Shown here: positions 1 through 44,413 of the stretch, piece after piece
How positions within the stretch are numbered: the first letter of the stretch is position 1
Layout: the number at the start of each line of letters is the position of its first letter
Source: Lepidodermella squamata
Lineage: Eukaryota > Animalia > Gastrotricha
Direction: 5' to 3'
Assembly (NCBI GenBank): GCA_047495785.1
Contig: JBLDXI010000002.1
Location: 496,001 to 560,000 of the forward strand
Length of the DNA stretch: 64,000 nucleotides
Translations under genes and position numbers: made by a program
Notes under the pieces: model-generated
What the model saw: the letters and a program-made list of their open reading frames with translations, nothing else
The model's database searches: none
Told to the model about the DNA's origin: nothing

Positions 1-2
1 AG

Positions 3-206
3 GATCGAAAAGCTTGGATGCATTACGTGATGGGTGAACTTTCTGAAGTTGGCATTAGGCGGACTTATGCTTTTCGACAAGCGCTACAGCGATGCCCAGA
101 ATTCATACCAGCGAGTCGGGTAATGATTGAAATGCACAGCTCAGTTTTGGAAGAACCGTCACAACCTGAACTTTACCTTCCAATAACAGACGAGGATTCA
201 CTGTAG
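3..206 (+). CDS. Nuclear receptor NR-0, last exon only (gene starts left of the window)
   Basis: DRKAWMHYVMGELSEVGIRRTYAFRQALQRCPEFIPASRVMIEM aligns with the last exons of NR-1 and NR-2. AATAAA at 365-370. The 3'UTR resembles that of NR-1 (about 3110-3240). Confidence 0.9.
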   Translation, partial: DRKAWMHYVMGELSEVGIRRTYAFRQALQRCPEFIPASRVMIEMHSSVLEEPSQPELYLPITDEDSL

Positions 207-1738: not shown

Positions 1739-2999
1739 ATGAATCAGTCAATTTGCCCGGTTTGTTATCAGCCTTCGTTTCTAAATGCTGGTTCCAAGTT
1801 CCAACAATCTATATATTTTGCAGGTTTGCGCAGCCTTCACCGATGGCAAGAAACGCTGTGGCGCTTTGGTTTGTGAAGCTTGCAAAAGATTCTTTTTGCG
1901 GCTAAGAACTTCCCCGGACTGCCTCGACCACATCGAGTGTCAAAAAACGCGAGCCAGACTCAGCAAAAATGGCTCATTGTTTCGCAACTCCTGCAGAAAA
2001 TGCCGGTTTGAACGCTGTATCGAACTTGGTATGTACATGGAAAGCAGGGATAGGCGCCGATGCGCGAAAACCAAGTCTACTAGCATCTTGGCTTACGTTA
2101 GTGTTGGCCTAGTTCCTATGAAGGAACCAAGTCGTCTCGAGATCGTTGGCAACTCACTAGTCAATCAGGCGATTTTCCTAAGGCAGAAAATCAACAGCCT
2201 GCCGTTCCGAAGGCGCGAGTCGCCGGTAGCTATCGATTCCAGTGATGTTCTACGCATGTGGACTATGAGCATGCAGCACAGTAATCAGGTAGCTGTTTTC
2301 CAGAGTGAGTTTATGAGATGTCTACCCGGCTTCCACGAACTCACTTTATCGGACCGCTGCAAATTGTTCGCAAATGCTTACTCAAAAATTAATTCCGTCA
2401 CAACGTGTTGTGAGGGGGTTGCCTACGCTGCTGGTTTCGGTGCGTCTAGATTGAACTCGGAAATATTCATATCGAAAATTCCAGAAAGTTCGGTAAGCAG
2501 AACTGCTCTGAACCTTGAAAATCAAACAAACTCTTTATTCAAGTACGCATTACTTGAGGCAGATCATCTCGGTCGCATTTTCGAAGCTTGGAATCCGTCG
2601 GATTTCGAAATAGCAATTCTGATTGCCATGCTGTTCTATACAAGTTAGTTACAATCTATTGAACTTCTTTTCTATAATTTCGAATTGTTCTCAGGTCTGC
2701 CGTGTTATGCAATGGAGAATCCCAGTGCTCGAGATCGAGCGCTGCAAGAGGTCGAAAGTCTTCATTTCTGCGCGACTGGCGGCAGCGAGGATCGGAAAGC
2801 TTGGATCCATTACGTCATGGGTGAATTTTCGGAAGTTGGCACAAGACGAACTGTGGTCTTTAGCCAACTGCTGCAACGATGCCCGGAGTTCATACCAGCG
2901 AGTCGAGTTATTAATGAGATGATTAACACAGTTTTGGGGGCGCCGTCTCCGTCTGATTCCGATCGTTACCCTCCTTTCCCAGACGAGGACTCATGCTAG
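1739..2999 (+). CDS. Divergent nuclear hormone receptor NR-1 (~364 aa); exons 1739-1759, 1824-2492, 2544-2643, 2695-2999
   Basis: CP|VC..CEACKRFF and CRKCRFERCIELGM (DBD); FMRCLPGFHELTLSDRCKLF (LBD signature); VINEMI (AF-2-like). GT-AG introns of 64, 51 and 51 nt. Confidence 0.93.
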
Positions 3000-3937
3000 A
3001 GTTGATTTGACAACGAACGCTGAATAATCAGTTCTGTTTCCTTATTTATTATTCTCGGCATATGGCCTCCGTGTCCGTGTACCTTTCAATTTCTCTTCCC
3101 CATAGGACTACCAATCATGTCATGTTTCTCCTGATTTATCCATACGTCAGAAAAAATCATTGTCAATAGTCAATAGCAATTATCCTGTGAAATAAAATGG
3201 AGATAGTTTGTGCTATTTTTGAATTGTCTATAATTCATATATCCATACAGGCTCATTTTGAAATTATTAATAGCCAAAGGTTCCTTAACTAAAATTGACG
3301 CCGCCCCATGTCAAAGACATTTTAGGGATTTGTTAGGGTTTATCCCCGACATATTTAGAGCTATTTAGACCAATGTTGGGGTCTTAATTAGTTAGTCTTC
3401 AAGGTTGGACCCAAATAAGGGTACAACAACCCCAACAACACGAATGCCAGCACATATATACAAGGCCAAGCCTAGAGTCAAAGTCGATCCGAATTCTTCA
3501 ATTCGGTTCGGATGTTTAAATTCGTTAACAGGCGAGCGCCGTTTACTTGTTGATATCAACTTTACGGTTTTTTACAGAACTTCAGGAGGATCCACGGCTC
3601 AGTTCCAAGACGGTTAATTCTAGAAAAATAAGGAATGCTCGATTCTGAAGGCAGAAGTATAACTGAGGCTGCGCAAAGTTCGGTATAGAATCGCATCGAA
3701 TCTAGCGCTACAATGGAGCTTTGTGCTTGACCCGAGCTAAATGCGCTAGTTACGCTGAGACGATAATAGATTTCGACGTCTATTTCAAACGGCGACATCA
3801 ATGATTAACATAATTGAATCTAGTCATGGTGATCTGAAAAATGTGAGCTGTCATGTGAACTATCAGCACTGTCTTCACGTGCAGCCGTGGCAAAGCGGAA
3901 TGCTCTGAATTTTGGACAGCCCTCATAATAACGACTA

Positions 3938-5158
3938 ATGGAAACATCATGCCTGGTAAGTAATTTTTGGTCTTTTTGATGCCTCTAGAGAATATTATTG
4001 TTTTCCCAGGTATGCCTTACCTTCACGGACGGCAGGAAACGTTGCGGCGCTTTGGTTTGCGAGGCCTGCAAAAGATTCTTTCTACGGCTGAGAGCTTCAC
4101 CAGAAAGCATCGAACACATCAACTGCCGAAAATCGAAAGCAAGCCTCAGCAAAAATGGTGCATTCTTCCGCAATTCCTGCCGAAAATGCCGGTTTGAGCA
4201 TTGTATCAAAGTCGGGATGTACTTGCAGAGCAGAGATACGCGAAGAGTAGTCAGATTCAAATCAGCAGCAGCTACGATGCCAGAAATCTTTGTTGGCCAA
4301 GTTTCGATAAATGAGCCTATCCGAGTCGAAGGAATAAGCACCTTATTGGTAAATCGAGCCTTGCATTTGAGACGCCAAATCAACAGCCTGCCATATCGAA
4401 GGCGCGAGACGCCGATAATTCTAGATGACAGCGATGTTCTCCGCATGTGGATTGTGAGCATGCAGCACCATGACCAAGTCGCTGTGTACCAACGAGAATT
4501 TCTAAGCGTTTTGCCAGGCTTCAATGAGCTCACTATTTCGGACAGATGCAAGCTGTTTTCGAATTCCTATTCCAAAATTTCTTCGGTCAATACATGCTGT
4601 GGAGGTGTGGAAACTGCTGCCGGGTTCAATGCTTCCCGGGTAAACGCAGAAATATTCATCGCCAAAGTTCCTGAAGCTGCGGTAGAACCTTTCAAATTTC
4701 CCTTTTCAATTCCAATAATCTTCTTTTTTCAGTACGCGATGCTTGAAGCTGATCATCTTGGCCGCATTTTCGAAGCTTGGATGCCGTCAGATTTCGAAAT
4801 AGCAGTCCTGATTGCGATGATATTCTACACAGGTTTACCTGCTCAGCTGATGGAAAATCCTGGAGCTCGAGACAGAGCCCTTCAACAGATCGAAAATCTT
4901 CACTTCTGCGCAACCGGCGGCAGTAAAGATCGAAAATCTTGGCTCTATTACGTCATGGGAGAATTCTCAGAAGTTGGAACAAGGCGGTCTGTTGCTTTCC
5001 AACGAGTTCTACAACGTTGCCCTGAATTCATACCATCAAGCCGAATAATGATGGAGATGGTTGATACCGTTTTACAACGCTCTTCTTCTACTACTTCATC
5101 CGATTGTGAATACAACTCACCTAGCAGTTGCGATTACTACACGTCAGTTCGGCATTGA
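3938..5158 (+). CDS. Divergent nuclear hormone receptor NR-2 (~371 aa); exons 3938-3955, 4010-4681, 4733-5158
   Basis: METSCL|VCLTFTDGRKRCGALVCEACKRFF; LPGFNELTISDRCKLF; IMMEMV. Introns of 54 and 51 nt; the third intron is absent. Confidence 0.93.
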
Positions 5159-5511
5159 TTTCCAGACATTTTTCATCGAGTTACTAGTCTTCATCTTATT
5201 TGTGTCGTATTCTATAGTATGTATTGTGAAGGAATTCCTTGATAGATAAAGTTGCGACATCAATTCACCGTTGAATGGTAATTCAATAAAAGCCCCCGAA
5301 AATGTTACAGAAATGTGTCTGAAACCATGTGAGTGAAGCATCACCTTAAAATTCAAGACTAATTCTAATTCAGCTGCTGTCACAACAGGCGAGGACACTG
5401 AATTAATGTCATGCGACAGTTTTCCTGAGTTCATTGATTTGGTTTTAAATCTACGGGCGAACACCTTTATCAGGCGCATCCTTTTCACAAAAAGAAACTG
5501 GATAACTTGGA

Positions 5512-6863
5512 ATGAAGCGAGAATGTCAGGTCAGTTTCCAGTTTCAAATAAAATGTTTTCTGGAGCTAGCCAGAGTCAACTAGTCAAAGGGTGGACCAGC
5601 TTGTGAATTTCAACATGATTTTTCACGAAATTTTCAAAAGCCCATGCACCCATCATTTGAATATGATAATGTTTCACAGGAAGTTTCTCAAGCTTTCCCT
5701 GTGTATCTAGATTTGTTTCGCTGCAACAGATGGAAAGCGTCGATGTGGGGCTAGAGCTTGTGAAGCTTGCAAACGATTTTTCCTTCGCCATCGGTCGTGC
5801 CCAGGAATCCTACAACACTCAGATTGCTACCAAGCAAGGTCCACGTACAATAAGGCCGGTTCTTGTTTCCGAAACGCGTGCCGAAAATGCAGGTTCGAGC
5901 GATGTCTAGCAGCTGGGATGCACCTCTACGACCGATGTGCTCGAAAGGCAACCCAATTCCCCCTCAGCGTTGAATCAAACCCATCCTGCAGCGAAGCAAC
6001 TCGGCTTGAGATCGATTTAACTACTTTAGTTTCAAACGCTTTGACAATGAAAACCAGAATGGCAAATCACCCTTTGCGACGAAAAGACTCCCCTGCAATC
6101 ATGGATGGGTCGAGCGCGTTGCGAGCGTGGCACGCTGCTATGGATCATCTTAGCTGCAAGGTCGACTATCAACGAGATTTTGTTAAAGCGCTGCCATGCT
6201 ACAAAGACCTCAGCATCAGCGATCGATGTGGGCTGTTTGCCGTAGCCTTTCCCAAGTTGACTACCATTAGTGGTTGCTGCGAGGGTTCATCTCGATCAGC
6301 TGGTTTCGGAGCGTCCCCGGAAAATGCGGAGATTTTCGTAAAAAATATTCCAGAGTTATCGGTAGTTACTTTTAATTATTTTCCTGTTGTATTTATTAAA
6401 CGACTTTTTCAAAAGTATTTGAACGCTGAAGCTACAAACCTTGGACGCCTTTTTGACTCGTGGAAGCCATCTGACATTGAATTATCTGTTTTGATGGCTA
6501 TTCTATTTTTCAATGGTGAGATTTTTTCTATAAATTGATACCTGATATCCACTCTATCCGATAGGACTACCAGCCCATGAAGTAGAAAGACCCAATGTTA
6601 TCAAAGTTGTTATGAAACACCTCGAACGCTTGCATTTCTGTGCTACTAACGGATCAGCGGATCGAAATGGTTGGCTTTGGTACGTTGTCAATGAATTCAA
6701 TGGCCTGGAACAAAGGATTTACCTTGCTCTGAACTACTTATTGAATCGATGCCCTGAGTTTATCCCATCGAGTGGAATCATCATTGAGTCGATGCAGGCT
6801 GCACTTGGAAACGAAATGCTGCCAATGGGAAGCAACTCGCAAAACCTATCGCTAACCAGATAA
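5512..6863 (+). CDS. Divergent nuclear hormone receptor NR-3 (~355 aa); exons 5512-5529, 5711-6361, 6416-6515, 6565-6863
   Basis: MKRECQ|ICFAATDGKRRCGARACEACKRFF..CRKCRFERCLAAGM; FVKALPCYKDLSISDRCGLF. Intron positions match the paralogs. Confidence 0.92.
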
Positions 6864-7255
6864 AGGAATAATTTTTTTGAGAAAATGAAAAATAAATGCA
6901 TCTTCTTGGCTGATAAGTGCCGCACATGAGTCACTGGGCTCACTGATACGGCGAGCGTATGTCAGGAATTTTCCGAATGAGGAAAAAAGAAATAACTGCC
7001 CAACTTCTCCTTTGTCTGAATTTATCGGTTATTGTTTCATTCTTCCTGACCAATTTAATTGGCGTAGCATTTGAGATGTCACGTATAAATTGTGTATAGC
7101 CCTAAATAGCAACAACAGTTCTATGAAATTCGTCTTGTTGAAGACACTGAATTAGTTCGAGTTTGCATGTGTTCAAAGATCAAGTTTTTAATCTATGAGT
7201 AAGCAGATTTTAGACGCAAACTTTTCTAGATACTAGAATAACTGGATATCATAAA

Positions 7256-8618
7256 ATGAAACGAGAATGCCAGGTCAGTTTCAACTAATTTCTGTTTCCT
7301 TCAGCAACACCAGATTCGAAAGTGCGTTGAGTGAAAGAGGATTGAAACCTATCGCTTAATTTTTGGGGCAGCCTATGAATTTTAACCTATTTTTGCGAAG
7401 GTCTCGAACCTATCATTCGAAGCTACAGTCCAAATCATATTTTCTATGGATTTCCATGTGTATCTAGATTTGTTTTGCTGCCACCGATGGAAAGCGTCGA
7501 TGCGGAGCCAGGGCATGTGAAGCCTGCAAGCGATTTTTCCTTCGACATCGCTCGAGCCCAGGCATCCTACAGCACTCAGATTGCTACCAAGCAAGGTCCT
7601 CGTACAATAAAGCTGGTTCTTGTTTCCGAAACGCGTGTCGAAAATGCCGGTTCGAGCGCTGTCTAGCCGCTGGGATGCACCTCTACGACCGATGTGCTCG
7701 AAAAGAAACTCAGTCCACCGTCAGCGTTGCGTCAGAACCATCATGCGTCGAGGCAACTCAGCTTGAAAATGACTTGGCCTCTTTAGTGTCAAAGGCTTTA
7801 ACGATGACAACTAGAATGGCTAGCCATCCCCTACGACGGAAAGACTCCCCTGCAATTCTAGAAGCCTCGAGCGTGCTACGGTTATGGCACGCTGCTACTG
7901 ACCATTTGAGTTCTAAAGTAGATTATCAACGAGATTTTGTCCGAGGATTGCCTTGCTACGGCTACCTTAGCATCAGCGATCGGTGCAAGCTTTTCGCCGT
8001 AGCCTTCCCCAAGTTGACTCTCATTGCTGCCTGCTGCGAGGGTTCATCCCGATCAGCTGGTTTCTGTACGTCCCCAGCAAATGCGGAGATTTTCGCGAGT
8101 AATATTCCAGAATTATCGGTAACATTTCGCAATATCGTTTTAATTTATCAAGTGAGTTGTTATTAGTATTTGAACGCTGAAGCTGCGAACTTTGGACGCC
8201 TCTTTGATGCATGGAAGCCATCTGATGCCGAATTAGCTCTTTTAATGGCTATTCTTTTCTTCAATGGTCAGATGTTAATTAATACAGCCGTAAATATTTC
8301 AAGACTTGTTCTACTTTAGGATTACCAGGCTATCAAACGGAAGGATCGACAGTGATTAGAAGCGTTATGAAGCACCTGGAACGCTTGCATTTCTACGCTA
8401 CGAGGGGTGCAGAGGATCGAAAAGGTTGGCTGTGGTACGCTGTCAATGAATTCAACGGACTGGAGCATCGGCGATATCTAGCTCTCAACTACTTATTGAA
8501 TCGATGTCCTGAGTTTATCCCTTCAAGCAGAATTATCGTTGAATCGATTCAGGCTGCACTAGGAAACGAGATCCTGCCTATCGAAAATAACTCAAAAAGC
8601 TTATCGCTAATCACATAA
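7256..8618 (+). CDS. Divergent nuclear hormone receptor NR-4 (~355 aa, close paralog of NR-3); exons 7256-7273, 7468-8118, 8167-8266, 8320-8618
   Basis: DBD nearly identical to NR-3, with identical exon lengths (18/651/100/299). Confidence 0.92.
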
Positions 8619-9229
8619 TTCTCTAAAAAGATAAATAAATAAATGGACTTCTCCGTTTTCTTTTGGAAATAAGAGAATTAGACTTTGTTTGACTCTGAAG
8701 TGACGAACATATTTTGATTAATAATTTATTTTCAAAGATACATTTTGCGAGCCTATTAGTTGAATATTTCCAATAAAACATAGAAATTAAAGTCACACAT
8801 CAAAAGTACCACTCTGATTTTATCCGAATGCTGGATCTTCCTGACCTATTTAAGGGATGAGGAATTTACCTCCCAACAAGCTGCCATATTCTATCAAATT
8901 TCTCTCATTTTCCCAGGTATTGTCTCAATCTGGAAATTGAATCTCTTAGCTTCCTCCAATTTCCCTTCTACGAATCCTTCACACACCCTTCGTCACATGC
9001 TGTGAGGTACAAAAATTGCCTGTCTCCATAGCGAACAGCAGGAAGAGCAAACCGCCATCAAGGTGCGAACGGGGTTCACTTAACGAGAGATTTGATTCGA
9101 ATCCAAGAAAAGCTCACATGTTAACGGTATCGTATTTCACGTGGGCAGCTGGGCAGCTTTTCTTTCATCAAATGAATAAAGACTTCGTCGAAAATTCAAA
9201 GCTTGAATTTCTCATTGCTCGAGGTAGTA

Positions 9230-10589
9230 ATGAAAGTGAAAAACACGGTGTGTAAAGTTCTGTGCAAGGTAAGAAATGTTTTAACCTAGTTAGGTATTTG
9301 TGATCTTGAGATATTGTCTAGATTTGTGACGTTCCAACGGATGGGAAAACGCGATGTGGAGTCGAGGCTTGTTTAGCCTGCAAGAGATTCTTTTTACGCC
9401 ACCGATCATCGTCGGAGAATTTATTCCACACCTGCGCCCCGTATCACACGCCAACGCATGTGATCAGCAAAACAGGATCGCTACTTCGCAAGGCCTGTGC
9501 GAAATGTCGATATGAAAAATGTATCGTAGTTGGTATGTTAGAAGCTGCGACTTCATCAGTTGATACTGTAACCGTACCTAGTGACGGCGAATCTTCAAAA
9601 ATGGAGCGAGAGATTGGGGCACTGGCTGAGAGTTCAGTCACCCTGCGGACCCGGTTCTCATCAATGCCAATGCGGAGGCGAGCTTCGTCCGTGTCGCTGG
9701 ATACAACAAGTCACGTGACCGCCTGGAATGCGGTTATGAAGCATGCCGAGAGCATGTTCAATTACCAGAGTGAGTTCGTGAAATGCTTACCTGGATATCG
9801 GGACCTGAGCCTGCCGGACCGGTGTCGATTGTTTGCGAACGCCTTCTCGAAGATTGGGCTGGCGGATGGGTGTTCATACAACCCAGCTGATGCTGCAGCG
9901 TTCAACATGTCCCTGAGTAACGCTAACGCTTTAGAGCAAGTTATCCCTGAATTTGGGGTATTATTTGATTTGTTTGGTATTTTTTGGTAATTTTCACGAT
10001 TTTTCAGTACGCATCAGCGGAAGCAAGGCACATTGGTGCTATATTTGACCAATGGAAACCGACTACACTCGAAATGGGGTTCCTTTTTGCTTTTCTATTT
10101 TTTACTGGTTAGTTTCACAATTTCTAAAATTCTTGTCTTAAATTTACTCATTTTACTATCAAAATTAATATATGCAAATGTATGCATAATTTATGCAAAT
10201 TAGCAAAAATTAGAATTATATTAAAATCTTTGATCAATTGGTATGAGAATTCCTTAAATTAAATTATTATTATTTTTTAAATTATGTTTGCAGCTCAGCC
10301 TCGAGAAGAGCTGGACAATGCATTTGCGGTTGAAACGTCGATTGCGTACTTGGAAAGCATGCATCACCGCTACGTCTGCGGAAGCCAGGAGCGAAAAGAA
10401 TGGATGCAATACGCGATTCGAGAATTCACCGGCGTGGAGCAGCGGCGTGGCTTTGCGGTGCGTGACCTACTACTACGCTGCCCTGAGCTACGCCAATCGA
10501 GTCGTGTGGTTTACGAGGCGGTCGAAGTAATCATCGCGCCGTCATCCGCCCCCAGCTCCCGTCGAGGCAGCGTGATTGATGAAAAATGA
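9230..10589 (+). CDS. Divergent nuclear hormone receptor NR-5 (~356 aa); exons 9230-9268, 9322-9957, 10008-10107, 10294-10589
   Basis: LCK|ICDVPTDGKTRCGVEACLACKRFF..CAKCRYEKCIVVGM; FVKCLPGYRDLSLPDRCRLF; VVYEAV. Confidence 0.9.
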
Positions 10590-10883
10590 TACCTCAAATG
10601 ACTTTTTCAGACATTATTTTCGTCTCCTAGCGTGTAATCGCGTTATTTTCGTTGTAATTTCACTGCTTGGTCAATTATACTTATCATCGTTCTCGCTGAA
10701 AACATTTTCACGCTAAAACTACTAAATGAAAAAGTGTGTCTACGGAATACTGAGTCAGATCCCGTCACTTTCAATTTAATTGCAGGATTCTCACGCTTTT
10801 CATTTTGACTGACAAGAAGTACAGTGCTAATCCCGAAGAAAAAAATACAAGAAAATCGATGAAACGTGCTTTTTTCAAAAGAG

Positions 10884-12146
10884 ATGAGTTTGGTTGTATT
10901 CCAAGCAAACCATGGTTCAAAATTATGCAAGGTTTTTCATTTTACGGCTAATTCGATAATTCTTTATAAAATACTCGTCACAGGTTTGCAAAGTCCCGAT
11001 AGACGGCAAGAAAAGGTGTGGAGCTCTGGTTTGCGAGGCTTGCAAGCGATTTTTTCTCCGCCACCGTCGTTCGGGTCAAAACCTGAAGCACTCATCCATA
11101 AAATGCTTAAGTATCGAGCCTGGGAAAGTTCCCGTTGTAACCGATCGCTCTGCCTGCCCGAAATGCCGATTCGATCGCTGTGTATCGATTGGCATGCACC
11201 TCTACGACCGCCTTGAACGGCAAAATATGCCTGAGAAGGCTGTTCATCACATAGTCCTCGACGATGATGTTCGCATGGAGCGAGATTCTGTATCCTTAGT
11301 AGAAAGGACTATTCTACTACAGCTCGGCATTTCCGGGCTACCATTGCGACGAAAAGATTCGCCTGTTTTCATTTGCGAAAACGATTTGGTGGAAGTTTGG
11401 CCGTTGACTATAGCGCATCTTGCGGGTATTGGCGAATGTCAGCGAGATTTTATCAAAAGACTGCCCGGCTTCAGAGATCTCACTTTATCTGATCGTTGCA
11501 TATTGTTCTCTGGGGCTTATTCCAAGATTCTCATTGCGAACTCTTGCTCTTCGAGTTTTGATGAAGCGACGGGTTTCGGAATGTCACAAGCGAACGCCGA
11601 AACAGCAGTAAAGCTGGTCCCTGAACTTAATGCAAGAAAAGATATAGTTTTCGCTTTTCGTGCCTTTACATTCCTATTTCAGTTTGCTTACATGGAAGCT
11701 CGGTACTTCTGGCGAATTTTCGATCAATGGAAACCAACAAAGCTTGAATTAGCTGTTCTCACTGCTATTTCAGTGTACACAGGTAATCCATTACTCTCAG
11801 CCAACGGATGCTAGAATTTCTTTTTCTAGGCTGTAATGCTGAACAACTTTCGAATCCAAAAGCTGTCGAGGATACTCTAAGGTACCTTCAAGGCTTGAGC
11901 TTCACAGCAAGTTGCGGGGATGAAAAACGACAGTCTTGGATGAATTTTGTCCTCAATGAGTTCAAGGATGTCACAATGAGACGCTATGTTGCGTTTCGAT
12001 CAGTTTTTCAACGATGCCCGGCCTTATTAGCGAGGAGCGAAGGACTTCTCGAAGCGATGATATGGACGAAAACTCTATCCACAACTGCTCAAGAACCTAT
12101 AAATGAACCTTCAATAATCGACCCCGGGCAAGACAAAGCCCTGTAA
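10884..12146 (+). CDS. Divergent nuclear hormone receptor NR-6 (~370 aa); exons 10884-10931, 10984-11631, 11683-11782, 11830-12146
   Basis: LCK|VCKVPIDGKKRCGALVCEACKRFF..CPKCRFDRCVSIGM; FIKRLPGFRDLTLSDRCILF. Intron 2 has a GC donor at the homologous position. Confidence 0.9.
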
Positions 12147-39980: not shown

Positions 39981-41235
39981 TCATTGCACTATAGCTGCCA
40001 TCAGAATTGCATCGACAATAACAGTGATTAAAGTCATGATGCCGAAGAATACACTGTCAACAACCCTAATGAAGGACATCCCACTTTTGATCTCCACCCA
40101 GCATCTAAAAGTCATTTTCTGCTTGAAATACTCAACCCTAGCAAGCTGGCACGACATTTGGCAATACAACGAGCAAATGACACTTGCGCAAAAGTGGAAA
40201 TTTAGAAAAATCGTAATCAAAGGCGTTTCCGCACTTTTTGGCAGCTTCTCGTCTATCGACGATTGAAGAACAGAAAAAGCGAGAACGATTGTCAGAGCTA
40301 TAGAAGATCGTTCAGCCTCTCGTGGCGGCACGAAACCTGTTCCGAGCTGTAGCAACATCAGGCCGAAAGAGGGTACAAAAATCGAAGTGATATACACCTG
40401 AGATTGGCGTCGGTAAAAGAACTGATACGTTATATGATCGTAAGACTCAGGCAGGCCGGCGTAGGTGAGATTGTAAATGATGGCTTCGTAAGAATCGAGC
40501 GTCCATAAACTGCTTTTCTCAATAAAAGTCTCTGGATCTAGTCGAAGAGGTGGCGCGGTGCCATTTGGCGGGAAAATCATTTGAACCCAACTCCGTTCTC
40601 GCCAGCCTTCCACGTGTAGTGTGCAGTTTTGAACATCAAATGGAAATAATCGGTAACTATAGCCAAAATTTCAAACAATTGCTGAAAACTTCAGAGATTT
40701 AACTTTACTTGAATGTGCATTTGTATTCGAATTTTGAATAAATATTCCATTGGAAAGTTCCGTCTCGATTTATGACCACCGTGCTCCGCCGTCCAGTTGG
40801 CATAATGAATTCAGCATCTTCCGCTGCGTTTATGAACAGGAAATTCGGGTACCAGTAGTTGTACATCCAATCTTCAATGGATTCGACCTTATTAGGAAAG
40901 GGGTACGAGTCGTTCCATGACACACATGGATGCTTCCAAGCCATATTAATTTGTCCGACAAACGAAACTCTGGAATGTTCAAATTTTAGAAACGTTGCAA
41001 ATCAGGCAAAAGCTTACATTTCTTCATCGATTCCGCGGAATCCATTTGCGTGAAGAGTTAGAGTGACCGGGACAGTTTCATTGAACTGGGCAGCTGGCCT
41101 CGCTTTCGAGTGTAACGTACAGGATTCTACCAGTGTCCTTAGTACCAGCTCCTCCTCGGGGACATATTTCGGCGAGTAATCGCTAGCTTCGGCCATCGAG
41201 CCAACAGGCAACAAAATCAAGAGGCACACGATCAT
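39981..41235 (-). CDS. Cys-loop (pentameric) ligand-gated ion channel subunit 1 (~384 aa); exons 41235-41018, 40969-40709, 40656-39981
   Basis: Signal peptide; ARP; WYPNFLFIN (loop A); Cys-loop CTFNYRLFPFDVQNC (C-x13-C); four TMs; M2 AERSSIALTIVLAFSVL; LPKS in the M2-M3 loop. Confidence 0.92.
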
Positions 41236-41499
41236 TTTCTATTTCCCGCATAAAATTCGAGAGACGGAAGATGTGCGAAAGCTCCTTTCATCGATTATTT
41301 AATCTCTTTTCAAGAGTTACTCAGCTCGCCGTAGATAGATTCAACACATTTTTAATAGCATTTATTACCTAGAAAAGAGGCTTAATTAAACCAAGATTTC
41401 AAAAGAAGCTTTACTAAATTTGAAAAATGACGGACCACGCTTAAAATACCGGAAGAACACACCATGAAATTCCGACAAGATGAAATAAAATATTGATAT

Positions 41500-42733
41500 T
41501 TAGTCCAGCAACGAGATGATTAATCCAATGTCGACAATCGCCGTTATGACTGATGCTGTGCCGAAAAATAGCAAATCCAGCATCCTTATGGCGCTTAATT
41601 TGCTAGCGGAGAACAATTTTTGCTTGAACATCGACATCCGAGCCAGCTGGCACGAAAGTAGCGTATAGGCGGAGCAAGTCACACTGACGCCGAGTTGGAA
41701 ACTCAGGAAAATCGTGACTAAAGGAATTTCCGAGCTTTTCGGTAGCTTGTCTTCGATTGAAGATTGAAGCACGGCGAAAGCTAAGACGATCGTAAGAGCA
41801 ATTGAAGACCTCTCCGGCTCTCGTGGAGGCACGAATCCCGTCATGAGTTGCAGTATCATCAGCCCGAAAGACGGAACGAAAATCGAAGTGACGTAGACCT
41901 GGGATTCCCGTTTGAAGTAGAATGAGTAGCGAATATGATCGTAGGATTTGGGGAGACCGGCGTAGGTGAGGTTGTAGAGGTCTGCGTCGTAACCAGCCAG
42001 CGACCACAAGCTACTTCTCTCCATGAATCGCTCAGGCTCGATTTGGATAGCGAGGCTCGAATCATTCGTTGGAAATACCATGTTGACCCAATCTCTCTCA
42101 CGCCAACCTTCGACATGTAGCGTACAATTCTGGGTGTCAAATGGGAATTCTCGGTAACTGAAAATTTCGAATTTTTAAGGAGGAATTTTTTCGGATTATA
42201 CTTACTTAAAGAGGCATTTAAACTCGAATTTCGCGTAAACATTCCATTCGAAAGAGCCCGTTCGTCGGATCACTACAGCAGTTCGCCGGCCAGTTGGCAT
42301 GAGGAACACAGCATCATCAGCTGCATTGATGAATAAGAAGTTCGGGTACCAGTAGTTGTACATCCAATCCTCGACTGATTCGACTTTATTCGGGAAAGGG
42401 TAGGTATCATTCCAAGAGACACAAGGGTGCGTCCAGGCCATGTTTATCTGACCAACGAATGACACTCTGTCGGAGTTAAAACCTTCATTGAAATGATTTC
42501 ATGCGCCTGAAAGCTTACATTTCGTCGTCGATTCCTCGAAACCCGAAGGCTAGAAGTGTTAGAGACACTTGCATCGTCTGTTCATAGCTCGCGACTGGTC
42601 GTGCCTTAGAGTAGACGCTACATTCTTTTATGAGCCACTGCAGTATCGCCTCTTCCTCAGGCTCGTAAATCACTGCTAAAGCAGCCGCCAAGATTAAAGA
42701 AGTTGAAAGTGCGAAGAAAATTAAAAAGGCCAT
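41500..42733 (-). CDS. Cys-loop ligand-gated ion channel subunit 2 (~377 aa); exons 42733-42519, 42466-42206, 42157-41500
   Basis: CLFNYREFPFDTQNC; PERSSIALTIVLAFAVL; same intron positions as subunit 1. Confidence 0.92.
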
Positions 42734-43172
42734 TTTGTAAGGTTTTATGCCACTTTTACCAGAGCTCGTAAACCCTACATTGGCCTACAATGTTTGGTCC
42801 TTGGTTTTTTCGATTAGCGTGAGCCTGGACTGCTTTAGGGGAATTCTTTCCCAGAACCTTGAGGGTAATTTCGATTTTTACCCTACAGCGGCAATCACGT
42901 TAATGAGACCCTCAACTCAAACATCATCGTGTGGGGCCAGGCTCTTGATTTCTGTCCTAAAAAATCGAGTCTCAGACCCTCGAGCTAAGCAAAAAAATCA
43001 CGGAGCAAATACAACATTAACCTGAATGATGTGTTTTTATCAATAAATAAATTCCCCCACGAGCAAGCAGAGCTCCGATACTCATAAATCATTTACTAGC
43101 GATTTGCTGGCAAAATCTCGCTTTTATTCGGGAATGTTATTAAGATAGTTAAACTGAAAGTTCTGCTCTCGA

Positions 43173-44413
43173 TCACTGTGCCATTGCTCCGATCAGCCCA
43201 ATGTCGACAAAGAGCGTGACGACTGATATCGAACCGAAAAAGGTAAGGTCCAAGCAGCGAATCGCGGTGAATCTTGTCCGCATGTAATACTTTTTCTCGA
43301 AATATTCCATTCGAGCTAGTTGGCACGATAACAAGCAATAAATCGAGCAGACGACACTGACGGCAAGCTGATAGCTCATGAATATGGTCACCAGTGGAAT
43401 TTCCGAACTTTTCGGTATTTTGTCCTCGATCGAAGACTGAAGAACGGCGAAGGCTAAAACGATCGTCAATGCAATCGAAGACCGTTCGGGTTCTCTTGGT
43501 GGAACAAAGCCCGTGCAAAATTGCAGAATCATCAGACCGAAAGAAGGGACGAAAATTGAAGTGACATAGACCTGAGATTGCCGCGTGAAGTAGAACGAGT
43601 ATCTGATGTGATCGTACGACATAGGGAGACCAGCGTAGGTTAGATTGTAGAGCGCGGCGTCGTAGTCGGATAGATACCAAAGACTGCTTCGTTCCATGAA
43701 ACGTTCCGGTTCAATTTGAATCGCCTGACTTGAGTCATTGTTGGGGAACAACATGTCGACCCAGCCTTTTTCACGCCAATCCTCTACGTGAAGCGTGCAG
43801 TTTTGTGTATCGTACGGAAAGTTTCGATAACTGAAGAACCAACAGAAAATTTCAGATTTTTTAGTCCTATCAAGACTCTTACTTGAATAAGCATTTGAAT
43901 TCAAATTTCGCGTATATGTTCCATTCAAAGGACCCAGTACGCCGAATAACCACTGAAGTTCGCCTACCCATCGGCATGATGAATTCAGCGTCATCAGCTG
44001 CGTTGATGAATAGGAAATTTGGGTACCAGTAATTGTACATCCAATCTTCGATAGACTCGACCTTGTTCGGAAACGGATATGTATCATTCCAACGAACGCA
44101 GGGATGAATCCAAGCCATGTTGATTTGGCCAACAAATGACACTCTGTTGGATAAAAAATTCATGAAAAACATCCGAGCTTATATCACGTTACATCTCGTT
44201 TTCAATTCCTCGAAATCCAAAGGCTAGTAGGGTTAGCGTAACTGGCATAGTCTGTTCGTAACTTGCGGCTGGTCGAGCTTTCGAAAATAGACCGCATTCC
44301 TGTATCAGCCATTGAAGAATTGTTTCCTCCTCGGGAACGTAAGACAGCGCAGATACTGTTACTGTTAGGATCCCCAGCAAGCTAACGACGCAAAAGGTAG
44401 GCGCTATCATCAC
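43173..44413 (-). CDS. Cys-loop ligand-gated ion channel subunit 3 (~379 aa); exons 44413-44193, 44143-43883, 43830-43173
   Basis: CLFNYRNFPYDTQNC; PERSSIALTIVLAFAVL; same intron positions as subunits 1 and 2. Confidence 0.92.

What the first reader, a model, noticed from the sequence alone, without database searches (positions are those of the whole stretch)
1739..11200. Nuclear receptor family with a rewired DNA-binding domain: one Cys lost from finger 2, a new invariant Cys in finger 1
Seen in all six complete paralogs. Finger 1 is C-x2-C-x14-C-x2-C (canonical spacing is x13), and the canonical H-Y/F-G turn is replaced by an invariant R-C-G. Finger 2 lacks a conserved D-box Cys pair: only one Cys is conserved before the C-x2-C, always with a His just upstream (HIEC, HINC, HSDC, HSDC, HTC, HSSIKC), and it is followed by a 16-20 residue loop. 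Established: NR DBDs are C4+C4 with finger 2 C-x5-C-x9-C-x2-C, and the D-box mediates DNA-dependent dimerisation. Inference: zinc site 2 is completed either by the His (HCCC) or by the new RCG Cys cross-bracing from finger 1. Either would be an atypical DBD topology, probably with monomeric or altered-spacing DNA binding. The pattern persists while the LBDs are highly diverged, which points to selection rather than decay.
Basis: partly seen in the sequence, partly recalled or inferred. Interest (0 to 1): 0.85.

Follow-up and report, generated by a model that had tools for sequence, protein, structure and literature searches.

The report
Nuclear receptors with a histidine-rebuilt zinc finger
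Six neighbouring, expressed genes of a small invertebrate encode hormone-receptor-type gene switches. In their second zinc finger, a histidine sits exactly where a standard zinc-binding cysteine should be. This is an unusual but not unprecedented variation on a very well known protein family.

Summary
The window holds six intact, co-oriented nuclear-receptor (NR) genes (1739-12146, + strand), plus the tail of a seventh at the left edge.

- **Finger 1:** C-x2-C-x14-C-x2-C with R-C-G in all six. The first Cys lies in a tiny first exon.
- **Finger 2:** H-x(1-4)-C-x(16-20)-C-x2-C in all six.
- **Expression and selection:** four genes (p2-p5) are covered by spliced RNA-like contigs. The close gene pairs show purifying selection (dN/dS about 0.15 overall; 0.018 in the p3/p4 DBD).

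New here: the invariant His lies exactly 11 residues after the FF of CKRFF. That is the position of Cys5 in the nearest relatives (24 of 42) and commonly in the other NR DBDs examined. Those relatives are unnamed metagenome proteins. They share x14 and the long loop but keep Cys5-x6-Cys6. So Cys5 became His and the D-box shrank to 1-4 residues, most likely giving a His-Cys3 zinc site.

The R-C-G Cys is not new. It occurs in relatives with an intact C4 finger 2 and in about half of the first DBDs of two-DBD receptors, and it varies (N, M, S, L) in sister clades. Cross-bracing by this Cys is therefore unlikely.

Zinc and DNA binding are untested. A Cys-to-His change in NR finger 2 is published for flatworm HR96b, at a different ligand. 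Earlier notes of this scan report related arrays elsewhere in this genome.

The parts
1..206 (+). C-terminal LBD end of a seventh paralog, cut by the window edge
Evidence: ORF 18..206 reads like the p1/p2 C-termini (..RCPEFIPASRV.IEM..).
1739..2999 (+). p1, 364 aa. Exons 1739-1759, 1824-2492, 2544-2643, 2695-2999. His codon 1929, Cys6 1938, R-C-G Cys 1857.
   Evidence: Gene model, codon coordinates. Has an extra Cys three residues before the His (C-x2-H-x2-C). Not covered by the stretch on which reads were laid.
3938..5158 (+). p2, 371 aa. Exons 3938-3955, 4010-4681, 4733-5158. His codon 4115, Cys6 4124, R-C-G Cys 4043.
   Evidence: Intron 4682-4732 (GT..AG, 51 nt) is skipped in an RNA-like contig of run X2. 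Before Cys7 it has only His plus one Cys. It lacks the last LBD intron that the other five have.
5512..6863 (+). p3, 355 aa. Exons 5512-5529, 5711-6361, 6416-6515, 6565-6863. His codon 5816, Cys6 5825.
   Evidence: Both LBD introns are skipped in X2 contigs. Extra Cys at RSCP and GSCF.
7256..8618 (+). p4, 355 aa. Exons 7256-7273, 7468-8118, 8167-8266, 8320-8618. His codon 7573, Cys6 7582.
   Evidence: Gene model. X2 contigs lie on the DBD and LBD exons. The DBD is 97% identical to p3, with dS 0.62.
9230..10589 (+). p5, 356 aa. Exons 9230-9268, 9322-9957, 10008-10107, 10294-10589. His codon 9427, Cys6 9433 (H-x-C). P-box CLACKR.
   Evidence: X2 contigs lie on 9300-9699.
10884..12146 (+). p6, 370 aa. 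Exons 10884-10931, 10984-11631, 11683-11782, 11830-12146. His codon 11089, Cys6 11104 (H-x4-C).
   Evidence: Intron 11632-11682 would need a GC..AG donor, or it is retained in frame. This was not checked with RNA.

Best explanation
This is a tandem array of six (at least seven) expressed, selectively maintained genes of a lineage-specific nuclear-receptor family. Each gene has one DBD and one divergent LBD.

The family's DBD differs from the textbook one in three ways:
- one extra residue in finger 1 (x14);
- a P-box EACKR, with Cys at the usual Tyr/Phe position of H-Y-G;
- a long, probably hairpin-shaped insertion between Cys6 and Cys7 that carries a conserved G-x2-[FW]-R.

In the branch found in this window, the first ligand of zinc module II (Cys5) has additionally been replaced by His, and the D-box has shrunk from 6 residues to 1-4. 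Module II therefore reads H-x(1-4)-C-x(16-20)-C-x2-C.

The most likely mechanism is that zinc II is held by His plus Cys6, Cys7 and Cys8 (a His-Cys3 site). The H-x2-C turn would act as an ordinary zinc knuckle, and the rest of the DBD keeps the receptor fold and its recognition helix. Because the D-box is nearly gone, D-box-mediated dimerisation on DNA is unlikely. The proteins would then bind half-sites as monomers, or pair through their LBDs.

**Shown:** gene structure, expression of p2-p5, purifying selection, positional equivalence of His and Cys5, and a receptor-like predicted fold.
**Inferred:** zinc ligation by His, the DNA-binding mode, and the target sequence.
For: - **Gene models.** All six have intact reading frames.
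- **Expression.** RNA-like contigs lie on exons only, with GT..AG joints in p2 and p3.
- **Selection.** dN/dS is 0.154 for p3/p4 (DBD 0.018, dS 0.62) and 0.169 for p1/p2.
- **Position of the His.** It is at index 11 after FF in six of six genes. Cys5 is at index 11 in 24 of 42 nearest relatives. The D-box is 6 residues in 40 of 42 relatives. The Cys6-Cys7 loop is 16-24 residues in relatives and 16-20 here.
- **Common ligand set.** Among residues of finger 2, His, Cys6, Cys7 and Cys8 are the only four-ligand set common to all six. In my reading of the alignment printed, the His is the only invariant residue among linker positions 4-13.
- **Conserved Cys.** The conserved Cys is invariant in all 47 aligned family DBDs.
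- **Predicted fold.** The AF2 model of the p2 DBD has mean pLDDT 75. It shows helices at the recognition-helix and second-helix positions and a small hairpin in the long loop. All 50 best Foldseek PDB matches are receptor DBDs, with TM 0.47-0.62.
- **Precedent.** A Cys-to-His change in NR finger 2 is published as the CHC2 motif of flatworm HR96b (PMC8363021).
Against: - No zinc, DNA-binding or structural measurement exists.
- The tools gave no model coordinates, so His-to-Cys geometry could not be measured.
- The spacing from His to Cys6 varies (1, 2 or 4 residues), which is loose for a fixed knuckle.
- p1, p3 and p4 carry other Cys residues that could serve instead.
- All six His codons are CAC, so there is no synonymous variation to show independent retention.
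- phmmer against Rev-erb aligned the conserved Cys with Cys5 rather than Cys6. The His = Cys5 reading therefore rests on comparison with the nearer relatives.
- The exon 1 junctions, and p1 and p6 as a whole, are not verified by RNA.
Confidence: 0.62

Rival explanations
1. Zinc site II is completed by the Cys of R-C-G in finger 1, cross-bracing the two modules.
For: The R-C-G Cys is invariant in the six genes, with both TGT and TGC codons in use.
Against: The same Cys is present in relatives that keep a full C4 finger 2 (RCG in 10 of 42), so it predates the loss of Cys5. It is N, M, S or L in sister clades (RNG in 17 of 42). It is also found in 33 of 64 first DBDs of two-DBD receptors, which nearly all keep two Cys before Cys7. 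It occupies the Tyr/Phe position of H-Y-G. From my memory of solved receptor DBDs, that position faces the DNA backbone and the core of module I, not site II.
Confidence: 0.05
2. The fourth ligand differs between paralogs. The extra Cys in p1 (index 8), in p3 (index 5) and in p3/p4 (four residues before Cys7) serves in those proteins, and His or another residue serves in p2, p5 and p6.
For: p1 has C-x5-C with canonical D-box spacing, and p3/p4 have C-x4-C-x2-C.
Against: None of these Cys is shared between subgroups. p1's sister p2 and p3's near-twin p4 lack the respective Cys, yet they are under the same purifying selection. The His is kept in all six genes.
Confidence: 0.12
3. Module II no longer binds zinc with four protein ligands. 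Either three Cys plus water hold the metal, or the site is empty and the long hairpin stabilises the fold. The His is kept for another reason, such as a DNA or partner contact.
For: His-to-Cys6 spacing is variable. Confidence in the model is lowest in this region (pLDDT 62-74).
Against: Cys6, Cys7 and Cys8 are invariant across paralogs whose synonymous sites are saturated, and across 47 family DBDs. That is hard to explain without a metal site. The His sits exactly at the old ligand position.
Confidence: 0.15
4. The copies are decaying pseudogenes or a gene-prediction artefact.
For: Pfam scores are low: zf-C4 at 25-32 bits, and Hormone_recep at or below its cutoff.
Against: There are six intact reading frames with conserved intron positions. 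Spliced RNA-like contigs are present. dN/dS is well below 1. The C-terminus keeps an AF-2-like motif (hydrophobic pair, x, E, hydrophobic pair) in all six, as I read the alignment.
Confidence: 0.02

Closest known systems
Unnamed 'x14 / long second finger' receptor family, known only from metagenome assemblies (e.g. P0001, P0004, P0014, P0029, P0007, P0030)
   Same: Finger 1 is C-x2-C-x14-C-x2-C with T-D-G-x-x-R-x-G or R-I-R-C-G. The P-box is CEACKR or C.ACKS. Cys6 to Cys7 spans 16-24 residues and includes G-x2-[WF]-R-x2-C. The LBD is homologous (best local HMM hit 51 bits). The window's six genes group with the RCG-type members at SH-aLRT 86.
   Different: All 42 members keep a two-Cys D-box, and 40 of them have Cys5-x6-Cys6. 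The window genes have His at the Cys5 position and only 1-4 residues before Cys6. The relatives show no intron inside the first C-x2-C. No relative scores better than E = 5.7e-26, so none is a close orthologue.
First DBD of two-DBD nuclear receptors (2DBD-NR, NR7; Wu and LoVerde, PMC10497141)
   Same: The P-box is EACK[K/R]. Cys occupies the Tyr/Phe position of H-Y-G in 33 of 64 first DBDs, and never in second DBDs or the canonical DBDs retrieved. The LBD HMM scores two-DBD receptor LBDs (about 39 bits) above the canonical receptors retrieved (29 bits or less). A tree constrained to join the family with first DBDs has a higher likelihood than the free quick tree (+38 lnL). Joining it with second DBDs lowers the likelihood (-24 lnL).
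   Different: There is one DBD per protein here. Finger 1 is x14 rather than x13. Finger 2 is not C-x5-C-x9-C-x2-C. The window-DBD HMM favours first over second DBDs by only 3.9 bits on average. The DBD tree does not resolve the relationship.
CHC2 second zinc finger of parasitic flatworm HR96b (PMC8363021)
   Same: It is a nuclear receptor in which one Cys ligand of zinc module II is replaced by His and conserved across a clade. The function of the change is unknown.
   Different: There the His replaces the second Cys of the D-box (Cys6). Here it sits at the first (Cys5), and the D-box is shortened. The receptor lineage is different (HR96, NR1J), and finger 1 there is not reported as x14.

Membership tests
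Nuclear receptor superfamily | DBD matching Pfam zf-C4 above the curated cutoff | tested here: met
   All six score 24.8-32.2 bits against a cutoff of 21.1, covering profile positions 15/16 to 68/69 of 70.
Nuclear receptor superfamily | Finger 1 C-x2-C-x13-C-x2-C | tested here: not met
   Four Cys are present but the spacing is x14 in all six. The canonical x13 spacing is as stated in PMC10497141.
Nuclear receptor superfamily | Finger 2 C-x5-C-x9-C-x2-C (four Cys) | tested here: not met
   The pattern here is H-x(1-4)-C-x(16-20)-C-x2-C. Only three Cys are conserved.
Nuclear receptor superfamily | Receptor DBD fold (two helices packed across two zinc modules) | tested here: met
   The AF2 model has pLDDT 75 with helices at residues 18-28 and 58-68. 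The 50 best Foldseek PDB matches are all receptor DBDs with probability 0.98-1.00. The model lacks Cys1 and contains no metal.
Nuclear receptor superfamily | C-terminal ligand-binding domain (Pfam Hormone_recep) | tested here: inconclusive
   The best Pfam score is 23.2 bits against a cutoff of 23.5, on partial unspliced pieces. A local HMM of the six LBDs matches the LBDs of two-DBD receptors at E about 1e-12. An AF-2-like C-terminal motif is present in my reading of the alignment.
Nuclear receptor superfamily | Binds two zinc ions and DNA response elements | not testable with these tools
   This needs protein chemistry.
2DBD-NR (NR7) | Two DBDs in one polypeptide | tested here: not met
   Each gene model has one DBD.
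2DBD-NR (NR7) | P-box CEACKK in the first DBD | tested here: inconclusive
   The window has CEACKR in five genes and CLACKR in one. CEACKK is found in 47 of 64 first DBDs, and CEACKR in 1 of 64.
2DBD-NR (NR7) | Phylogenetic grouping with 2DBD-NR domains | tested here: inconclusive
   The free quick tree does not join them. A tree constrained to join the family with first DBDs is better by 38 lnL (p-AU 0.945). Joining it with second DBDs is worse by 24 lnL (p-AU 0.216). Only 67 alignment columns were used.
Flatworm HR96b CHC2 type | His replaces the second D-box Cys | tested here: not met
   Here the His is at the first D-box Cys position, index 11 after FF. The description of HR96b is from PMC8363021.
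Unnamed x14 / long-loop receptor family | x14 finger 1, and a Cys6-Cys7 loop of 16-24 residues with G-x2-[WF]-R | tested here: met
Unnamed x14 / long-loop receptor family | Cys5-x6-Cys6 D-box | tested here: not met
   40 of 42 relatives have it, and none of the six window genes does.

The most novel reading that the evidence does not exclude
The His-Cys3 module, the collapsed D-box and the conserved hairpin extension together form a functionally new DNA-binding module. It could be a monomeric reader that uses the hairpin for extra DNA contacts. It could also be a labile, pH- or redox-sensitive zinc site that makes DNA binding conditional. Earlier scan notes report separate receptor arrays in the same genome with C-x-H fingers. 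If those hold, this animal has rebuilt receptor zinc site II with His more than once. That would make it a natural test bed for how the most conserved domain of the receptor family tolerates ligand swaps.
Probability: 0.15. Interest if true: 0.75.

Novelty: new variant of a known kind. Interest (0 to 1): 0.5.

Why it matters
The DBD is the most conserved part of nuclear receptors, and its eight zinc-binding cysteines are treated as defining features. In the papers I could search, only one ligand swap is recorded: the CHC2 motif of flatworm HR96b. That paper describes it as unique.

A second, different swap is found here: His at Cys5, with near-loss of the dimerisation box and a long structured insertion. 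It is kept under selection in an expanding gene array. This shows that the domain is more plastic than the textbook pattern suggests.

It also has a practical consequence. Searches that require C-x5-C-x9-C-x2-C or x13 spacing, as used in published receptor surveys, would miss this family. Receptor counts in small, little-studied invertebrates are therefore probably underestimates.

The proteins are small and easy to express, so zinc stoichiometry and DNA specificity can be tested directly.

Tried and rejected
- **Close orthologues.** The search for homologous proteins with p2 gave one hit, P0001. With P0030 it gave only metagenome relatives. The exhaustive profile search found no hit below E = 1e-30. 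No second example of the His branch could therefore be examined.
- **Cluster look-ups.** These gave no names or accessions.
- **Organism.** The atlas search with a dynamin-like neighbour was uninformative. Rfam found nothing in the window. Run and organism names are coded. Earlier notes guess a rotifer or a gastrotrich, which I did not test.
- **DBD tree.** The quick tree (67 columns) did not resolve the position of the family relative to first or second DBDs of two-DBD receptors. The constrained-tree tests only lean towards first DBDs.
- **Alignment to Rev-erb.** phmmer placed the conserved Cys on Cys5. I rejected this in favour of Cys6. Measured against the nearest relatives, the Cys5 reading needs a 3-residue insertion plus a deletion of about 10 residues. 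The Cys6 reading needs one 4-residue deletion.
- **Model geometry.** The AF2 output gives no coordinates, so ligand distances could not be measured.
- **LBD fold.** Not attempted, because spliced proteins cannot be passed to the tool by reference.
- **Literature.** Searches for an x14 receptor finger, for gastrotrich receptors, for rotifer receptor surveys and for NR1O found no description of this family.


Full report
**1. What is in the sequence**

ORF listing and a motif scan show six receptor-type DBDs on the + strand between 1.7 and 11.2 kb. There are none elsewhere in the window on either strand.

The reading frame of each DBD exon is closed by a stop codon just upstream of a V/I-C, so the first Cys of finger 1 must come from another exon. 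Each gene has a candidate micro-exon 53-194 nt upstream, reading ATG...TG[TC] NNN | GT:
- p1: MNQSICP
- p2: METSCL
- p3 and p4: MKRECQ
- p5: MKVKNTVCKVLCK
- p6: MSLVVFQANHGSKLCK

In p3/p4 this exon is a conserved island in otherwise diverged upstream DNA. The pattern occurs in 6.9% of random 250-nt segments of the window but in six of six upstream regions.

Full gene models have three or four exons, introns of 47-194 nt and products of 355-371 aa. The last 62 codons of a seventh copy lie at 18-206. Gaps between genes are 294-938 nt.

**2. Are the genes real and in use?**

Contigs of run X2 lie on exons of p2, p3, p4 and p5 and are absent from the intergenic bins. Three of them skip GT..AG introns of 51, 54 and 49 nt at exactly the predicted places in p2 and p3. 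X2's RNA status is only a guess on record, but this pattern behaves like RNA. p1 and p6 lay outside the 6-kb stretch that could be laid. The exon 1 junctions were not among the joints listed.

Nei-Gojobori estimates:

| Pair | dN/dS overall | dN/dS in DBD | dS |
|---|---|---|---|
| p3/p4 | 0.154 | 0.018 | 0.74 overall, 0.62 in DBD |
| p1/p2 | 0.169 | 0.19 | 1.44 overall, 0.91 in DBD |

Most other pairs are saturated at synonymous sites; the few with an estimable dS gave 0.2-0.3 overall. Identity between the four subgroups is 49-62% in the DBD and 34-43% in the LBD. In my reading of the alignment printed, the C-termini keep an AF-2-like motif: VINEMI, IMMEMV, IIIESM, IIVESI, VVYEAV and LLEAMI. 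These are working genes, not decaying copies.

**3. The DBD pattern**

- **Finger 1** is C-x2-C-x14-C-x2-C with R-C-G in all six. The P-box is CEACKR in five genes and CLACKR in p5.
- **Finger 2** is H-x2-C in p1-p4, H-x-C in p5 and H-x4-C in p6. It is followed by 17, 17, 17, 17, 20 and 16 residues to C-x2-C.
- **Extra Cys** occur in p1 (three residues before the His), in p3 (RSCP) and in p3/p4 (four residues before Cys7). None is shared between subgroups.
- **Pfam** zf-C4 matches all six above its cutoff, but weakly.
- **Predicted fold.** An AF2 model of the p2 DBD, built on an alignment of 47 family DBDs, has mean pLDDT 75. It shows the recognition helix, the second helix, a C-terminal helix and a short hairpin in the long loop. 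The best 50 Foldseek PDB matches are all receptor DBDs.

**4. Relatives**

A word-indexed search with p2 found a single protein, P0001, from a metagenome contig that carries two such genes in tandem.

An exhaustive profile search of 1.84 billion representatives gave 1110 hits at E up to 1e-3, and none below 1e-30. Parsing the DBDs of the best 150, plus members of their clusters, showed three layers.

- **Nearest layer (window-DBD HMM median 60 bits).** These are 42 single-DBD proteins, unnamed and from metagenome assemblies in every case I looked up. They share x14 and a Cys6-Cys7 loop of 16-24 residues ending in G-x2-[WF]-R-x2-C. They read R-C-G (10), R-N-G (17), R-M-G or other triplets at the H-Y-G position.
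- **Second layer.** First DBDs of two-DBD receptors (median 37.5 bits). Their P-box is CEACKK in 47 of 64, and 33 of 64 have Cys at the same position (YCG, HCG or HCN).
- **Third layer.** Second DBDs and canonical receptors (about 34 bits), which read H-F/Y-G.

The window's LBD HMM also scores the x14 family best (51 bits). Two-DBD receptor LBDs come next (about 39 bits), and the canonical receptors retrieved come last (29 bits or less).

In a quick maximum-likelihood tree, the six window DBDs group with the RCG-type relatives (SH-aLRT 86). The wider position of the family is unresolved. Constraining the family with first DBDs gives a better likelihood than the free tree (+38 lnL, p-AU 0.945). 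Constraining it with second DBDs gives a worse one (-24 lnL, p-AU 0.216). A link to the first DBD of two-DBD receptors is therefore plausible but not shown.

**5. Which cysteine is missing, and what replaced it**

| Feature | Nearest relatives (42) | Window genes (6) |
|---|---|---|
| Residue 11 positions after the FF of CK.FF | Cys5 in 24 of 42 | His in 6 of 6 |
| D-box length | 6 residues in 40 of 42 | 1-4 residues |
| Loop to Cys7 | 16-24 residues | 16-20 residues |

Index 11 is also a common Cys5 position in the second DBDs of two-DBD receptors (22 of 64), in the multi-DBD proteins (18 of 39) and in the canonical DBDs retrieved (11 of 24).

The next Cys in the window genes is invariant in all 47 aligned family DBDs. 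It is followed by a loop that matches the relatives' loop in length and content. For example..ASLSKNGAFFRNSC here compares with ..ELTSKGVIWRHMC in a relative.

The simplest history is therefore: Cys5 became His, four D-box residues were deleted, and Cys6, Cys7 and Cys8 were kept.

The alternative is that the conserved Cys is Cys5 and Cys6 was lost, as in the phmmer alignment to Rev-erb. Measured against the nearest relatives, that needs a 3-residue insertion, a deletion of about 10 residues and no replacement ligand.

In my reading of the alignment printed, the His is the only invariant residue among linker positions 4-13. Among residues of finger 2, His plus Cys6, Cys7 and Cys8 is the only four-ligand set common to all six genes. 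Loss of one pre-Cys7 Cys is rare: 2 of 233 other DBDs.

**6. The R-C-G cysteine**

This Cys is not a novelty of the branch. It is present in relatives with an intact C4 finger 2, and in about half of the first DBDs of two-DBD receptors. It is replaced by N, M, S or L in sister clades. It therefore predates the loss of Cys5 and is dispensable in close kin. This argues against the cross-bracing idea.

**7. Mechanism (inferred)**

- Module II most likely binds zinc through His-Cys3, with H-x2-C acting as a standard knuckle.
- With a D-box of only 1-4 residues, the DNA-dependent DBD dimer interface of canonical receptors is unlikely to exist. The D-box role is as stated in PMC8363021 and PMC10497141.
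- The P-box E-A-C-K-R keeps the Glu and Lys of AGGTCA-reading receptors, so I expect an AGGTCA-like half-site. This rests on my general knowledge of P-box rules and was not tested.
- The conserved hairpin (G50 and R54 in p2 DBD numbering) may add contacts.

None of this has been measured.

**8. Comparison with the literature**

- PMC10497141 gives the canonical patterns, C-X2-C-X13-C-X2-C and C-X5-C-X9-C-X2-C. It also gives the EACKK P-box of first DBDs of two-DBD receptors.
- PMC8363021 reports a CHC2 second finger in parasitic flatworm HR96b. There a His replaces the second D-box Cys. The authors say it is not found in the receptors of any other animal studied, and its function is unknown. 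The window's pattern has the His at the first D-box Cys and a collapsed D-box, so it is a different solution.
- I found no paper describing an x14 receptor finger, this family, or gastrotrich receptors. The rotifer NR1O subfamily could not be read in the library, so I could not compare it.

**9. Earlier notes of this scan (leads, not evidence)**

- The array continues upstream (s1-404912).
- An 'extended second finger' family of about 60 genes, said to look like a one-DBD offshoot of two-DBD receptors, was reported on other DNA of this genome (s1-431974). My arrive at a similar view of the wider family.
- Other arrays with a C-x-H second finger are reported (s1-391734, s1-422703, s1-430056). 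That is a different substitution from the one here, and I did not test those.
- The organism is guessed to be a rotifer (s1-368324) or a gastrotrich (s1-421969). I did not test this either.

**10. Verdict**

The 'new Cys' reading is not supported. This is a new variant of a known kind: a lineage-specific branch of nuclear receptors with a His-for-Cys5 zinc module II. It is of moderate interest, and direct tests are available.

Noticed in passing
P0002, P0010, P0015, P0023, P0141 (hits): Public proteins of 560-880 aa carry four to six receptor DBDs in tandem in one reading frame, for example six in P0010, spaced about 80-105 residues start to start. That goes beyond the published two-DBD class. 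They could be real poly-DBD proteins or run-on gene calls.
   Followed up: no
window 11632-11682: In p6, the intron at the conserved LBD position starts GC rather than GT (AAT|GCAAGA...TTTCAG, 51 nt, in frame). It is either a GC-AG intron or is retained as 17 extra residues.
   Followed up: partly
window 4733-5158 versus the other five genes: p2 lacks the last LBD intron, which the other five paralogs have at the ..F(Y/F)(T/N)G|LP.. position (FFT|AQP in p5, VYTG|CN in p6). This is a recent intron loss within the array.
   Followed up: partly
L001 1414-2073 and 3164-3700: A 5.3-kb metagenome contig carries two tandem RCG-type x14 receptor genes that have no intron in the first C-x2-C. The family is therefore also tandemly arrayed in another, unidentified eukaryote.
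   Followed up: partly
window 12346-37000, - strand: There are three tandem receptor-type tyrosine phosphatase genes with very long repeat-rich extracellular exons (ORFs up to 1435 aa) and near-identical segments between copies. Other readers have noted them (s1-384364, s1-384552).
   Followed up: no
window 39981-44135, - strand: There are three neighbouring ORFs whose membrane-spanning halves resemble Cys-loop ligand-gated channels.
   Followed up: no
window 8123-8163 and 9309-9327: The DNA run X1 shows dense clusters of differences from the window in and near p4 and p5. These are probably a second haplotype or strain. In an array of similar copies, gene conversion is also possible.
   Followed up: no
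P0023 fifth DBD; P0130: These are the only two other DBDs among 233 that lack a second Cys before Cys7. P0023's fifth DBD reads C-N-H, the layout that earlier notes report for other arrays of this genome.
   Followed up: no
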